Shown here piece by piece: positions 2,565-51,094 of a stretch of DNA of 64,000 bases (position 1 is its first letter; every line of letters starts with the position of its first letter). The position numbers were made by a program, and so were the translations under genes. The stretch lies in the sequence record LC667451.1; one strand, 5' to 3'. The notes under the pieces are model-generated. The model did not search any database and had not been told where the DNA came from. It saw only the letters and a list, made by a program, of their open reading frames with translations.

Positions 2565-2577
2565 AGTGCCTCCTACG

Positions 2578-2610
2578 ACATAAGAGGCAGGACTGACCCT
2601 GCCTCTCTCC
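2578..2610 (-). terminator. hairpin with TTATGTC tail
   Basis: AGAGGCAGG/CCTGCCTCT stem. Confidence 0.7.
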
Positions 2611-2615
2611 TGGTT

Positions 2616-3041
2616 TTACTGCAAAGTCGGACGGTTGTCGATCACCGTATCGCGGAAGAGCAAACGGTGACGCTGCGTCGCGCGCGGGGCGCGCAATTCC
2701 ACGCCGTCGAGCATGGTGGTGTTGTAGCGCATGTACGAGACGTCCTTGTTGATCGTGCCCGCACTGAACTTCAACAGCTTGGCGATGAGAGTCTGCTTGA
2801 TGCCGTGCTTCAACATGTCAGCAACAATGGGCCGCCGCTCGTCCGGTCCCAGCCAGTACGACAACACTTCATCGACGCCGTCCCGAAACAGCTTGATGTC
2901 GTGTTTATCGCCGACCTGGGTCACCACCAGTTCGAGGTTCTTGTACTTGTGAACGGTGAGGCTGTAGTATTTGCGACTGCGTTGATACTTTGCTCGGAAG
3001 TCGCTAATGAAGTCGCCCACGCGATCGAATTTCTTTGCCAT
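2616..3041 (-). CDS. HTH DNA-binding protein
   Basis: LKHGIKQTLIAKLLKFSAGTINKDV HTH-like segment; start placed at MAKKF. Confidence 0.65.
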   Translation of the reverse strand: MAKKFDRVGDFISDFRAKYQRSRKYYSLTVHKYKNLELVVTQVGDKHDIKLFRDGVDEVLSYWLGPDERRPIVADMLKHGIKQTLIAKLLKFSAGTINKDVSYMRYNTTMLDGVELRAPRATQRHRLLFRDTVIDNRPTLQ

Positions 3042-3124: not shown

Positions 3125-3628
3125 TTAGTCCTGCAACTGGGTGTATTTGTGGAACTGATCCAGCGTATCCAACCAGATCTTCATCTGCTTCTGGATGTCG
3201 AGGGCATACTTGCGGCCGATGGCCGCTTTCGTTTCACCTGCCTTGTGACCCATGCAAAGCGTGAACCAGTAGTAGATCAGATCCGCAGAAAGGTGTGCCT
3301 TACGTGCCGGAACAGGAATCGCCACAGGCAACAAATGCGAACCAAACTGCGGCATCAGGTACACATTGTCCGATAACGAGAACTCTTTGTGACCAGACTT
3401 CTTACGCTCTTCCACGTCCTCAGTCAGGTAAACGCTACTGACCGTCAGGGCAGCGTTTGGCACGCCCTTGGGCTCCATTCTGAAGATCTGGTGACGTCGC
3501 CCATCTTCGGCTTCACAATCGATCCACGTCGTGTGGAGTTCCATGCTCGGATGCTTGATACCTTCCAGCAACAACACAATGTCCCAGAATGAACGATGAA
3601 ATTCCAGTCCAGTAACCAACATGATCAT
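3125..3628 (-). CDS. hypothetical protein
   Basis: ORF with AAGGAA SD before the ATG at 3628. Confidence 0.7.
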   Translation of the reverse strand: MIMLVTGLEFHRSFWDIVLLLEGIKHPSMELHTTWIDCEAEDGRRHQIFRMEPKGVPNAALTVSSVYLTEDVEERKKSGHKEFSLSDNVYLMPQFGSHLLPVAIPVPARKAHLSADLIYYWFTLCMGHKAGETKAAIGRKYALDIQKQMKIWLDTLDQFHKYTQLQD

Positions 3629-3653
3629 TTCCTTGTAAACACGTTGTAATAAG

Positions 3654-3683
3654 GGCATAAGAGGAGAGCCGAAGCCCTCCTCT
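3654..3683 (-). terminator. hairpin (TTCG loop) with TTATGCC tail ending the RNA cluster
   Basis: AGAGGAG..CTTCGG..CTCCTCT TATGCC. Confidence 0.75.
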
Positions 3684-3689
3684 CGATAC

Positions 3690-4140
3690 CAAAGCGTCGA
3701 TTAGCAGAGTCCAGTTAGTTAGGTAGCTGGGGAATGCTTTGACTCCTTGCGACTCGAATGCACTTCCGGCTACTCTCACAATCGGCGACCCGGATCGCCA
3801 TTCTGAAAGCAGACGGCTGCGCATTCTCAGCGACCATCGTAAGGCGCGAGACCTTTCGTCCAGCGCAGAAGCAACACATCACCGAAAGCGCGACGCACAC
3901 AAGGAAAGCGACAAGCGCAAACATCTCCGGGCGGGCACGTCGGGTTACCCCGGTTACCCACTGTTCGCGAAGAGCGATGACGTGCCACCAGACGGCAGCA
4001 GAGAACAAACAACTTGTCGAGCGTTGCGCACCCGACCGGACGGTTTATCAGAAGACCCCGCACGCAACTGCAGGCTTCCGAAACGAAGTGTCCCCCCATT
4101 AACCGTCAGTCATGGGGTCACAGGCGGAACCCGCCTGATC
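3690..4140 (-). ncRNA. candidate ~450-nt structured ncRNA downstream of tRNA-Phe
   Basis: no convincing ORF; many stems that need G-U pairs on the minus strand (GTTGCGTGC/GTGCGCAAC, GGCACGTC/GACGTGCC, CAGGCGG/CCGCCTG, CTGCGC/GCGCAG). Confidence 0.5.
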
Positions 4141-4216
4141 TGGTGGAAACGGGTAGAATCGAACTACCGACCACTGGATTTTCAGTCCAGCACTCTACCT
4201 GCTGAGTTACGTTTCC
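4141..4216 (-). tRNA. tRNA-Phe(GAA)
   Basis: full cloverleaf, CTGGA-CTGAAAA-TCCAG anticodon arm, encoded CCA. Confidence 0.97.
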
Positions 4217-4229
4217 GAATTCAATGGAT

Positions 4230-4307
4230 TGGGGTGTCGGATGGGATTCGAACCCATGACCCCTGGAATCACAATCCAGTACTCTAACCAACTGAGCTAC
4301 CGACACC
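4230..4307 (-). tRNA. tRNA-His(GTG)
   Basis: cloverleaf with G-1:C73 identity element, encoded CCA. Confidence 0.97.
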
Positions 4308-4320
4308 ACTGCTAAACAAG

Positions 4321-4398
4321 TGGCAGAGGGGGAAGGATTCGAACCTTCGCATGGCGGAATCAAAATCCGCTGCCTTAGACCAACTTGGCGACCCCCCT
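4321..4398 (-). tRNA. tRNA-Gln(TTG)
   Basis: cloverleaf, GCGGA-TTTTGAT-TCCGC, encoded CCA. Confidence 0.95.
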
Positions 4399-4408
4399 AA
4401 ATGAATCT

Positions 4409-4576
4409 GCTGCGAATACGGACAGGTAGGATTCGAACCTACGCTCGCCGAACCGATTCAAAAGGCTCTCTTCTGGCAGCAAGCCAGCCCCTCCTAAAGT
4501 CCAGTCCGACAAGATAACGGCGTAGCAAATAGCCGTTATTGCCTTCATCCGCTCAGCCACTGAACGTACCCGCAGC
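4409..4576 (-). ncRNA. tRNA-Ser-like RNA with extended acceptor stem, 8-bp anticodon-position stem and giant variable arm
   Basis: Ser-type D arm (GTGGCTGAGCGGATGAAGGC), intact T arm (GTAGG-TTCGAAT-CCTAC), no CCA. Confidence 0.7.
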
Positions 4577-4597
4577 AAAACCTTCTACTACTAATAA

Positions 4598-4674
4598 TGG
4601 CGCGGCGTAGGGGACTTGAACCCCTGACCTCTGGCGTGACAGGCCAGCGCTCTAACCAGCTGAGCTAACACCGC
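4598..4674 (-). tRNA. tRNA-Asp(GTC)
   Basis: cloverleaf, CTGGC-CTGTCAC-GCCAG, encoded CCA. Confidence 0.97.
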
Positions 4675-4680
4675 AAAATC

Positions 4681-4810
4681 TATTCAGCGCGTGATCACTC
4701 GTAGATCCTATCTGCCGCACGCATACAACAGACAAGCCCAGTGGATTGCGTCCACTCTCACTATATCGCACGAATAGGCGATTGTGTTACAAGTAATCCG
4801 CGCTGAATAG
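4681..4810 (-). ncRNA. ~130-nt multibranch structured RNA between tRNA-Glu and tRNA-Asp
   Basis: ~22-bp closing helix (TATTCAGCGCG+GATTACTTGTA / TACGAGTGATC+CGCGCTGAATA) enclosing three hairpins. Confidence 0.65.
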
Positions 4811-4824
4811 ACTACAAAAAAGCA

Positions 4825-4900
4825 TGGAGCAGCGTACGGGATTCGAACCCGTGTACTCACCGTGAAAGGGTGATGTCCTAGGCCACTAGACGAACACTGC
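4825..4900 (-). tRNA. tRNA-Glu(TTC)
   Basis: cloverleaf, TCACC-CTTTCAC-GGTGA, encoded CCA. Confidence 0.97.
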
Positions 4901-4917
4901 GAGGACTACAGAATGGG

Positions 4918-5055
4918 TTGTTGCCGTTTGGGGTGGACTCGAACCACCAGCCTCCCGTTTGTTTACCAGTTACCCTGCCCCAATACAACGATGGGGGGCA
5001 GACCCGGATTTGAACCGGGGTACACGGGCGCTCTAACCCTTGAGCTACCACGGCC
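4918..5055 (-). ncRNA. double-tRNA RNA 1 (outer tRNA body plus permuted inner tRNA body, no anticodon)
   Basis: two T arms (CCCGG-TTCAAAT-CCGGG; GGTGG-TTCGAGT-CCACC), two D-like arms, inner stem TCTGCCC/GGGCAGG. Confidence 0.75.
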
Positions 5056-5084
5056 ATCGACAAACTACTACTACTACGAAACTG

Positions 5085-5202
5085 TGGTCCCGCAAGGGTA
5101 GGATTTGAACCTACGACCTTCCCCTGGTGGCAAGCGGGAAACCCGCCTCAGTGGGCGGGGTCGCTTAAATGGGGACGCTCTACCAGACTGAGCTACCACG
5201 GG
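5085..5202 (-). ncRNA. tRNA-like RNA whose anticodon loop is replaced by a ~46-nt branched hairpin
   Basis: D arm GCTC-AGTCTGGTA-GAGC, stem TCCCC/GGGGA, T arm GTAGG-TTCAAAT-CCTAC, bulged acceptor, CCA. Confidence 0.75.
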
Positions 5203-5227
5203 CACTGATACATCTACTACGGAATTC

Positions 5228-5378
5228 TGTTACCGCAAGGTGTGGAATCGAACCACAGTCTTCCCCTAGTTTGTGCGTCTACCAGTTCCGCCACTGCGCG
5301 CGAACGCGCAGACGGGATTCGAACCCGCAAGTTTTGCGAACGCAAAGTGAGGACGATCTACCATTGATCTACCGCGGT
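5228..5378 (-). ncRNA. double-tRNA RNA 2 (outer body plus permuted Leu-like inner body)
   Basis: two T arms; inner acceptor CTGCGCG/CGCGCAG capped by TTCG; Leu-type D arm GGCGGAACTGGTAGACGC. Confidence 0.78.
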
Positions 5379-5406
5379 CATCGTGAAACATCTACTACAA
5401 TACTGC

Positions 5407-14835: not shown

Positions 14836-14879
14836 GGTGTTCTCCTATATCTACACCATAGCGCGTTACAGTAAAAACG

Positions 14880-14909
14880 GCATAAGAGCGGACCCGAAGG
14901 CCCGCTCTC
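14880..14909 (-). terminator. hairpin (TTCG loop) with TTATGCC tail
   Basis: AGAGCGG/CCGCTCT stem. Confidence 0.75.
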
Positions 14910-14929
14910 ACTGAGACGCACTAAGACGC

Positions 14930-28347: not shown

Positions 28348-28384
28348 GTCATAGAGCGGAGCCCTAGGGCTCCGCTCTTATGCC
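28348..28384. terminator. bidirectional hairpin with TATG tails on both sides
   Basis: gtcata-AGAGCGGAGCCC/GGGCTCCGCTCT-tatgcc between convergent genes. Confidence 0.75.
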
Positions 28385-28961: not shown

Positions 28962-28997
28962 AAAAAGAGCCCAGGGAAAAGTCCCTGGGCTTATGCC
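28962..28997. terminator. bidirectional hairpin (U-tail on minus, TTATGCC on plus)
   Basis: GCCCAGGG/CCCTGGGC stem. Confidence 0.7.
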
Positions 28998-51042: not shown

Positions 51043-51094
51043 GGCATAAGAGGAGGCTACCCCGTTAGTTTTACCTAGCGGGCATAACCTCCTA
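51043..51094 (-). terminator. long hairpin with internal and terminal TTATGCC
   Basis: AGGAGGTTA/TAGCCTCCT outer stem. Confidence 0.6.

What the first reader, a model, noticed from the sequence alone, without database searches (positions are those of the whole stretch)
3690..4140. ~450-nt highly structured RNA at the 3' end of the tRNA operon
Seen: the region starts right after the tRNA-Phe CCA, ends at the cluster terminator, and has no convincing ORF. It has many nested stems (e.g. 9-bp GTTGCGTGC/GTGCGCAAC, 8-bp GGCACGTC/GACGTGCC) and possible pseudoknot pairs (CGACAAG/CTTGTCG vs GCGCAA/TTGCGC). It lacks the tmRNA tRNA-like domain and the RNase P conserved motifs. Established: large ornate phage ncRNAs (GOLLD, ROOL) sit next to tRNA clusters. 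Inference: a relative of these or a new class.
Basis: partly seen in the sequence, partly recalled or inferred. Interest (0 to 1): 0.68.

Follow-up and report, generated by a model that had tools for sequence, protein, structure and literature searches.

The report
New large folded phage RNA
The last gene of the tRNA operon of the giant Burkholderia phage FLC9 encodes a roughly 490-base, intricately folded non-coding RNA that matches no known RNA family; its soil relatives all keep it, and its function is unknown.

Summary
The window is Burkholderia jumbo phage FLC9 (LC667451.1). The flagged stretch is real. On the minus strand, window 4140 to about 3654 starts directly after the CCA of tRNA-Phe and ends in a hairpin terminator.

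Homologues lie at the 3' end of the tRNA array in every FLC9-like phage genome or contig I could reach: 9 full copies in about 6 lineages, 389-585 nt, with one copy in each of the four near-complete or complete genomes checked.

Compensatory base changes support:
- a 5' domain with a pseudoknot and a 6-bp loop-loop (kissing) pairing
- a long helix, P5, that closes a middle domain of variable size
- a conserved 3' domain with two arms

G·U pairs outnumber A·C mismatches 79 to 2, which fixes the strand. No ORF is conserved. Nothing in Rfam 15 matches any of five divergent copies at E up to 10, including GOLLD, ROOL, tmRNA, RNase P and group I introns.

Two rhizosphere metatranscriptomes from one study hold contigs on its 5' half, but none on the flanking gene.

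Verdict: a new family of large structured phage ncRNA. It resembles GOLLD and ROOL in setting but is not a member of either. Its function is unknown. The scan has noted other tRNA-linked phage RNAs on other DNA, but not this one.

The parts
3654..4140 (-). Whole RNA gene (487 nt; RNA position = 4141 minus window coordinate).
   Evidence: Homologues align end to end. Models R1 and R2 each hit once in the window.
4141..4216 (-). tRNA-Phe(GAA), the last tRNA of the operon. Its encoded CCA abuts the RNA.
   Evidence: ARAGORN and Rfam.
4121..4137 (-). P1 hairpin (RNA 4-10 with 14-20).
   Evidence: helix 1: 96% of cells paired; the closing pair is seen as A-U and G-C.
4093..4117 (-). P2 hairpin (24-27 with 45-48). 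Its 16-nt conserved loop holds the 5' strand of the pseudoknot.
   Evidence: helix 2: C-G changes to U-A in one clade; 100% paired.
4101..4106 (-). Pseudoknot PK1, 5' strand (RNA 35-40, ACGGUU).
   Evidence: helix 3: G-C changes to A-U together with 96-101.
4040..4045 (-). Pseudoknot PK1, 3' strand (RNA 96-101, AACCGU).
   Evidence: helix 3.
4058..4073 (-). P3 hairpin (68-72 with 79-83). Its 6-nt loop GUUGCG (73-78) is fully paired with the loop of P4.
   Evidence: helix 4 (4 of 5 pairs compensatory) and helix 5 (kissing loop).
4016..4036 (-). P4 hairpin (105-111 with 119-125). Loop CGCAAC (113-118) is the partner of the P3 loop.
   Evidence: helix 6: 6 of 7 pairs compensatory, 100% paired. 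Kissing pairs seen: GUUGCG/CGCAAC, UUUGCG/CGCAAA, UUACGG/CCGUAA.
4008..4015 (-). Invariant single-stranded AAGUUGUU, followed by a 5-6 nt linker to P5.
   Evidence: Invariant in all 9 copies. No complement in the operon transcripts.
3827..4002 (-). Middle domain closed by the 10-12 bp helix P5 (139-150 with 303-314). Its inside varies from 81 to 276 nt between lineages.
   Evidence: The P5 duplex is present in all lineages with different sequences.
3931..3961 (-). P7 (180-186 with 204-210) enclosing the GNRA-capped hairpin P8 (189-192, GUAA, 197-200).
   Evidence: G-C, U-A and U-G at one P7 pair; P8 changes G-C to A-U and GUAA to GAAA in L006. Absent from L002.
3756..3826 (-). 3'-domain arm 1: Px (315-322 with 378-385, invariant) stacked directly on P5, then the Py helices and an apical hairpin.
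   Evidence: helices 2 and 3: 10 pairs with compensatory changes.
3696..3753 (-). 3'-domain arm 2: Pw (388-391 with 442-445, invariant), Pz (395-399 with 431-435), an inner hairpin CCAG/CUGG, and the invariant blocks GAGUCGCA and AAUCGACGC.
   Evidence: helices 4 and 5. The inner hairpin is CCUG/CAGG in the L008 clade (read).
3660..3684 (-). Terminator hairpin followed by CUUAUGCC.
   Evidence: Conserved with compensatory changes. The same hairpin-plus-motif recurs in other intergenic regions.

Best explanation
This is the gene of a stable, trans-acting, multi-domain structured non-coding RNA of a previously undescribed family.

Shown:
- It is encoded on the minus strand as the last unit of the phage tRNA operon, with no spacer after the CCA of tRNA-Phe and a hairpin terminator at its end.
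- It is kept at that position in all FLC9-like jumbo phages found, whatever the last tRNA is.
- Its fold is under selection. The fold has a 5' domain with a pseudoknot and a 6-bp kissing loop, a helix P5 that closes a domain of variable size and sits directly on the invariant helix Px, and a two-armed 3' domain with about 60 invariant unpaired bases.
- It encodes no conserved protein.
- RNA libraries hold its 5' half.

Inferred:
- It is made by read-through of the tRNA operon promoter.
- Its 5' end is freed by the host enzymes that trim the 3' end of tRNA-Phe, and the terminator hairpin protects its 3' end.

Most likely mode of action, by analogy only: it acts as a folded RNA particle, like GOLLD and ROOL. 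It would be a scaffold that self-associates or binds a conserved host or phage partner of the tRNA/translation apparatus during infection. I put about 0.9 on 'real new structured ncRNA', about 0.5 on 'acts as a scaffold or binding particle', and about 0.2 on 'homo-oligomer through the kissing loops'.
For: Identity of the window: 100% match to FLC9. The record annotates no gene here.

Homologues: reached through gp118 relatives and DNA patterns, all at the 3' end of tRNA arrays. One copy per genome in four genomes, three of them rated 98-100% complete by CheckV.

Covariation, 5' domain: 96.8% of cells paired and 15 of 35 pairs compensatory; 0 of 500 shuffles reach this; slid controls give 34-45% paired.

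Covariation, 3' domain: 12 pairs compensatory, 0 of 500 shuffles.

P5 is present in all lineages with different sequences.

Strand: 79 G·U cells against 2 A·C. The sense fold is 40 kcal/mol better than the antisense fold.

Coding: no conserved ORF.

Known families: no Rfam family at E up to 10 in FLC9, L006, L008, L011 or L010.

Expression: RNA-run contigs lie on window 3919-4137 and 3924-4063, with none on gp118 (the laid part, 3400-3622) or on 4412-4587.

Synteny: the downstream gene varies while the RNA stays.
Against: - No function or partner is shown.
- The flanking proteins gp118 and gp117 give no family or fold match.
- Only about 6 lineages of one phage clade are available, so several helices (Px, Pw) are invariant and untested.
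- I found no base pairing that ties the three domains together.
- The metatranscriptome evidence is thin: low-depth assembled contigs from one study, covering only the 5' half. They cannot give strand or exact ends.
- The RNA's overall nucleotide identity (60-72%) is no higher than that of neighbouring genes.
Confidence: 0.72

Rival explanations
1. The stretch is not one RNA. It is a chain of two or three smaller RNAs made from one transcript: a 5' pseudoknot/kissing module of about 135 nt, the P5 domain, and the 3' domain. Each would have its own role.
For: No inter-domain base pairs were found. P4 plus the U-rich tail looks like an intrinsic terminator to a consensus scan. The RNA-library contigs cover only RNA positions 4-222. 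Earlier scan notes on other phages found that similar 'ornate RNA' candidates were chains of modules.
Against: The RNA-run contig runs through the P4 tail to position 222. The linker to P5 is 5-6 nt in every lineage, and P5 abuts Px with no spacer, as expected for one stacked molecule. Order and completeness of the domains are kept in all 9 copies. No promoter-like site lies inside.
Confidence: 0.17
2. It is a cis-acting leader (riboswitch or attenuator) that controls the downstream genes gp118 and gp117.
For: It lies upstream of gp118 on the same strand and ends in a hairpin that could serve as an expression platform.
Against: The downstream gene is not constant. gp118 is missing in the L008/L009/L011/L012 clade, and L002 has about 500 nt carrying a second copy of the terminator motif inserted between the RNA and gp118. 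The terminator motif is a general intergenic signal of this phage. No alternative pairing with the terminator was seen. The size and the tRNA linkage do not fit known leaders.
Confidence: 0.04
3. It is a very divergent member of a known RNA family: tmRNA, RNase P RNA, a group I intron, GOLLD or ROOL.
For: Size and tRNA-linked position fit several of these. One weak hit to permuted tmRNA (16.7 bits, E = 1.3) spans the tRNA-Phe/RNA junction.
Against: That hit rests on the T arm of tRNA-Phe and does not recur in the homologues. ARAGORN finds no tmRNA. No Rfam model reaches E = 10 on the RNA in five divergent copies. The 5' and 3' ends do not pair. There is no tRNA-like domain, no P4-type motifs, and no host gene is interrupted.
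Confidence: 0.04
4. It encodes a small protein (the 90-97 aa minus-strand ORFs, or a short embedded ORF).
For: ORFs of 90 and 97 aa exist on the RNA strand.
Against: ORFs change frame, position and length in every lineage, and indels are not multiples of three (alignment). None has a PHROG match. Substitutions are compensatory in helices, not periodic.
Confidence: 0.02

Closest known systems
ROOL RNA (Rfam RF03087)
   Same: Large, pseudoknotted ncRNA of phages and prophages, often next to tRNA islands. It has a variable, poorly conserved internal region and conserved loop-loop pairings that were first read as tertiary contacts (PMC12286853). Function unknown.
   Different: No match to the Rfam model in any copy. 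Different helices and conserved sequences. ROOL was described mainly from rumen and Firmicutes prophages (my recollection, not checked here), whereas this RNA is in a betaproteobacterial jumbo phage clade. Oligomerisation is untested here.
GOLLD RNA (Rfam RF01998)
   Same: Phage/prophage ncRNA near or downstream of tRNAs. One end is conserved and another part is less conserved. Kissing loops and GNRA-type contacts (PMC12286853).
   Different: GOLLD is often over 800 nt and forms a 14-mer cage. There is no model match here. This RNA is 389-585 nt with a different architecture.
phi29 pRNA
   Same: A phage RNA whose two loops are mutually complementary. This rests on my own knowledge, not on a tool result.
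   Different: pRNA is about 120-174 nt, sits by the packaging genes, and belongs to small Bacillus podoviruses. No sequence or structure similarity was tested or seen.
tmRNA and RNase P RNA
   Same: Pseudoknotted RNAs of about 350-450 nt tied to tRNA biology. Some large phages (the phiCbK group, by my recollection) carry a tmRNA in or near their tRNA cluster.
   Different: No tRNA-like domain, tag frame or CCA end. No P4 motifs. The ends do not pair. ARAGORN and Rfam are negative.

Membership tests
GOLLD (RF01998) | Match to the family covariance model (conserved 3' region, stems P1-P27). | tested here: not met
   No hit at the gathering score or at E up to 10 in FLC9, L006, L008, L011, L010.
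GOLLD (RF01998) | Phage or prophage location next to tRNA genes. | tested here: met
   Directly 3' of the tRNA array in all loci.
ROOL (RF03087) | Match to the family covariance model. | tested here: not met
   No hit in five divergent copies.
ROOL / GOLLD | RNA-only homo-oligomeric cage. | not testable with these tools
   Needs native gels, SEC-MALS or cryo-EM. Only the complementary, covarying P3/P4 loops are known.
tmRNA | tRNA-like domain (acceptor stem with G·U, T arm, CCA) plus a tag reading frame. | tested here: not met
   ARAGORN finds no tmRNA. The Rfam tmRNA models give only a 16.7-bit hit that leans on tRNA-Phe. The only tmRNA-like string, CCCCAGCUACC, is not kept in the L008 clade.
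Bacterial RNase P RNA | Match to the RNase P models; the P4 pseudoknot with its universally conserved motifs; P1 formed by the two ends. | tested here: not met
   No Rfam RNase P hit at E up to 10. I saw none of the P4 consensus strings as I recall them in the sequence. The ends do not pair in the covariation-supported fold.
Group I intron | Interrupts a host gene; the P3-P7 core; a match to the intron models. | tested here: not met
   It is flanked by a complete tRNA-Phe and a terminator. No Rfam intron hit.
Riboswitch / leader RNA | Constant linkage to the regulated downstream gene, and alternative pairing with an expression platform. | tested here: not met
   The downstream gene differs between lineages. 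The terminator motif is generic to this phage.

The most novel reading that the evidence does not exclude
The covarying 6-bp pairing between the P3 and P4 loops may be intermolecular, as happened with a ROOL 'tertiary' kissing loop. The RNA would then assemble into an RNA-only ring or cage. That would make it a third, independently evolved class of tRNA-island-linked phage RNA nanostructure, this one in a culturable jumbo phage and host pair. A less likely alternative is that the roughly 60 invariant unpaired bases form a new catalytic or tRNA-binding site.
Probability: 0.2. Interest if true: 0.85.

Novelty: new variant of a known kind. Interest (0 to 1): 0.64.

Why it matters
Few large, intricately folded bacterial and phage RNAs of unknown function are known. 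Two of them, GOLLD and ROOL, are also phage RNAs next to tRNA genes, and both were recently shown to form RNA-only cages.

An unrelated RNA in the same genomic setting suggests that phages have evolved this kind of RNA more than once. That sharpens the question of what such RNAs do for tRNA-carrying phages.

Two things make it open to experiment:
- FLC9 is a cultured lytic phage with a culturable host, so knock-outs, northern blots, probing and cryo-EM are all feasible.
- The natural size range (389-585 nt) already marks which parts are dispensable.

It also corrects the FLC9 annotation, which lists no tRNAs and no RNA gene in the stretch of the record I read.

Tried and rejected
Searches for more copies:
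- blastn against 50,697 phage records found only FLC9 itself, plus tRNA-Phe hits.
- tblastn with gp118 and gp121 found FLC9 only.
- The first gp118 scan of IMG/VR gave nothing.
- The first 25-mer pattern gave nothing in IMG/VR or in the metagenome contigs.
- The genome contigs pattern scan gave nothing.
- The second metagenome scan gave only L013. It is an unrelated palindromic repeat matched by chance, and I did not pursue it.
- The looser 3' pattern gave 11 further IMG/VR loci, all chance matches by model R2.
- More distant phages that share gp115 (L019-L027) have no copy by R1 or R2.
- Contigs carrying P0005 could not be read because the files were too large.

Structure:
- My own 'Pc' helix (311-314 with 449-452) looked acceptable, but I dropped it because 311-314 belongs to the much better supported P5.
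- In one search the terminator helix was entered one base out of register, which lowers the percentage paired reported there.
- I found no Watson-Crick complement to the invariant single strands in the co-transcribed tRNA-operon RNAs.
- Resemblances to 5S rRNA, to the T-box UGGN motif and to a T loop, seen by eye, are not conserved in the homologues, and I dropped them.

Neighbouring proteins:
- No Pfam or PHROG family for gp113-gp123, apart from one HTH protein and one PHROG of unknown function.
- AlphaFold models of gp118 and gp117 (pLDDT 71 and 75) gave no PDB match at E up to 0.001. gp117 has only a weak HTH-like tail.

Literature: I found no paper describing this RNA.

Full report
**Where the window comes from.** The stretch 3600-4220 is 100% identical to Burkholderia phage FLC9 (LC667451.1, 321,833 bp, host B. 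glumae; window coordinate = record coordinate minus 124,000). In the 8.6 kb of the GenBank record read around the locus, no RNA gene is annotated. Nothing at all is annotated between gp118 (window 3125-3622) and a doubtful 'gp119' at window 4375-4548. A review places FLC9 in a new genus, grouped with Chimalliviridae (PMC12388082).

**The observation.**
- ARAGORN and Rfam find a minus-strand tRNA array from 5694 down to 4141, ending in tRNA-Phe(GAA) at 4141-4216.
- The flagged element starts at the next base, 4140. It runs to a 10-bp hairpin at 3660-3684 followed by CUUAUGCC. gp118 starts at 3622.
- The sense RNA folds at -212 kcal/mol, z = -4.4. The antisense folds at -172 kcal/mol, z = -2.7.
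- So the description is right, except that the 3' end lies about 35 nt beyond 3690.

**Relatives.**
- DNA and protein searches of the cultured-phage collection found FLC9 only.
- The word search with gp118 gave seven relatives at 56-99% identity. Their contigs gave one 326-kb JGI contig (L002) and short Logan contigs (L003-L007).
- A pattern from the most conserved block found five IMG/VR contigs, three of them 310-315 kb (L008-L012).
- In every locus that reaches far enough, the element lies at the 3' end of the tRNA array. The last tRNA varies: Phe-GAA, Ser-GCU, Phe-AAA, or an odd tRNA with an 8-nt anticodon loop.
- The synteny gp122-gp121-gp120 / tRNAs / RNA / (gp118) / gp117 ... gp115 is kept. 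gp118 is missing in one clade, and L002 has about 500 nt inserted after the RNA.
- Model R1 finds exactly one copy in each of four phage genomes. CheckV rates three of them 98-100% complete; no completeness figure is given for the FLC9 record.
- More distant jumbo phages that share gp115 (33-50% identity) have no copy.
- The family therefore has 9 full and 1 partial sequences in about 6 lineages of one phage clade, 389 to 585 nt long.

**The fold** (RNA numbering; window coordinate = 4141 minus position).

5' domain:
- P1: 4-10 with 14-20.
- P2: 24-27 with 45-48.
- Pseudoknot PK1: between the P2 loop (35-40) and 96-101.
- P3: 68-72 with 79-83.
- P4: 105-111 with 119-125.
- Kissing loop: a fully paired 6-bp pairing between the P3 loop (73-78) and the P4 loop (113-118). 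It reads GUUGCG/CGCAAC, UUUGCG/CGCAAA or UUACGG/CCGUAA in different lineages.
- On alignment A3, 96.8% of cells are standard pairs and 15 of 35 pairs show changes on both sides. None of 500 shuffles reaches these values. Sliding the partners by 1-3 columns drops pairing to 34-45%.

Linker and middle domain:
- An invariant AAGUUGUU (126-133) and a 5-6 nt linker lead to P5 (139-150 with 303-314).
- P5 is a 10-12 bp helix present in every lineage with a different sequence. It closes a middle domain of 81 nt (L002) to 276 nt (L010).
- Where present, that domain holds P7 and a GNRA-capped hairpin, P8. In L006, P8 changes G-C to A-U and GUAA to GAAA.

3' domain:
- P5 abuts the invariant helix Px (315-322 with 378-385) with no spacer. 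Px continues into the covarying Py arm.
- A second arm (Pw, Pz and an inner hairpin CCAG/CUGG or CCUG/CAGG) and the terminator follow.
- On A4, 12 pairs carry compensatory changes, with 0 of 500 shuffles reaching the count. I entered the terminator one base out of register in that call.

Strand: across both alignments there are 79 G·U cells against 2 A·C cells. That fixes the RNA on the minus strand and argues against a DNA-level element.

- The 9-bp pair is the kissing loop.
- GGCACGTC/GACGTGCC is kept, but with one-sided changes, and it competes with P7.
- CGACAAG/CTTGTCG and the second GCGCAA/TTGCGC pairing are not conserved, and they clash with P4.

**Not coding, not a known family.**
- ORFs of 45-160 aa occur in every copy, but in different frames and positions. 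Indels are not multiples of three. The FLC9 ORFs have no PHROG match.
- Rfam 15 at E up to 10 gives nothing on the RNA in FLC9, L006, L008, L011 or L010. The one exception is a 16.7-bit permuted-tmRNA hit that leans on the T arm of tRNA-Phe and does not recur.
- ARAGORN finds no tmRNA.
- I found no paper describing this RNA.

**Expression.**
- Of the runs that hold parts of the stretch, two are rhizosphere metatranscriptomes from one study.
- Laid on window 3400-4700, one has a 219-nt contig that lies entirely on 3919-4137, and the other a contig on 3924-4063.
- Neither has anything on the laid part of gp118 (3400-3622), on tRNA-Phe, or on the phage-specific stretch 4412-4587. Their other hits are tRNAs of other organisms at under 95% identity.
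- This fits an abundant or stable RNA whose 5' end lies next to the tRNA, and it shows read-through past the terminator-like P4 tail flagged.
- The evidence is thin: low depth, assembled contigs, one study, no strand information, and only the 5' half covered.

**How it probably works.**
- Shown: position, fold, conservation, non-coding nature, presence in RNA libraries.
- Inferred: transcription from the tRNA operon promoter; release of the 5' end by the enzymes that trim the 3' end of tRNA-Phe; protection of the 3' end by the terminator hairpin.
- The hairpin-plus-CUUAUGCC signal recurs in other intergenic regions (7 matches in the window against 2.2 expected; weak R2 hits). So it is a general end-of-unit signal of this phage, not a regulatory platform for gp118.
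- The constant linkers, the direct stacking of P5 on Px, and about 60 invariant unpaired bases suggest one compact particle with a specific binding or assembly surface.
- GOLLD and ROOL are the closest in setting: phage RNAs near tRNA islands, with a variable internal region, kissing loops and unknown function. In ROOL, a covarying 'tertiary' kissing loop turned out to be intermolecular (PMC12286853). Covariation cannot tell the two cases apart here.
- The neighbours gave no hint. gp113-gp123 have no informative family, and models of gp118 and gp117 have no significant PDB match.

**Caveats.**
- I found no base pairs that tie the three domains together, so a chain of modules remains possible (rival 1).
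- The family is narrow.
- The RNA's overall nucleotide identity is similar to that of neighbouring genes. The signal is the pattern of invariant blocks plus compensatory helices, not a slower rate of change.

**Other notes.** Nothing in this work needed a referred step.

Noticed in passing
window 2577-2612, 3654-3684, 14879-14924, 28377-28384, 28990-28997, 51043-51050; L002 5940-5985: A GC-rich hairpin followed by CUUAUG(C/U)C recurs in intergenic regions (7 motif matches against 2.2 expected; weak hits of model R2). It is probably the phage's own terminator or terminator-promoter signal.
   Followed up: partly
window 4375-4548 (minus strand): The GenBank CDS 'gp119' overlaps tRNA-Gln and the oversized tRNA-Ser-like RNA, so it is probably a spurious ORF call. 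No tRNA or other RNA gene is annotated in the 8.6 kb of the record read around this locus.
   Followed up: no
L010 9528-9602 and 9761-9838; L011 2457-2534: ARAGORN reports tRNAs with four-base anticodons (ttga, cgaa), meaning 8-nt anticodon loops, in the tRNA arrays of FLC9 relatives.
   Followed up: no
L009 9118-9287; L012 12748-12917: One clade carries tRNA-His(ATG) and tRNA-Phe(AAA). By my recollection, A at position 34 is unusual in bacterial-type tRNAs outside tRNA-Arg(ACG).
   Followed up: no
L002 5486-6000: About 500 nt lie between the RNA terminator and the gp118 homologue in the 326-kb JGI contig, ending in a second copy of the hairpin-plus-CUUAUGCC signal. The stretch holds ATG-initiated frames after SD-like strings, which I did not list or check; no gene is called there.
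   Followed up: no
window 4016-4036 plus 4006-4015: P4 plus the invariant AAGUUGUU and a U-rich tail is scored as terminator-like. An RNA-library contig reads through it, so it may instead be a protein-binding or RNase E-type site.
   Followed up: partly
window 2616-3041 (gp117): This small protein is conserved in all lineages just downstream of the RNA. Its C-terminal three helices give weak HTH-like fold matches (LuxR/NarL, DeoR, paired domain), so it may bind DNA.
   Followed up: partly
window 4400-5400: Several gaps in the tRNA array hold structured non-tRNA or anticodon-less tRNA-like RNAs with weak YrlA-like Rfam scores of 25-28 bits. Other findings of this scan already cover them.
   Followed up: no
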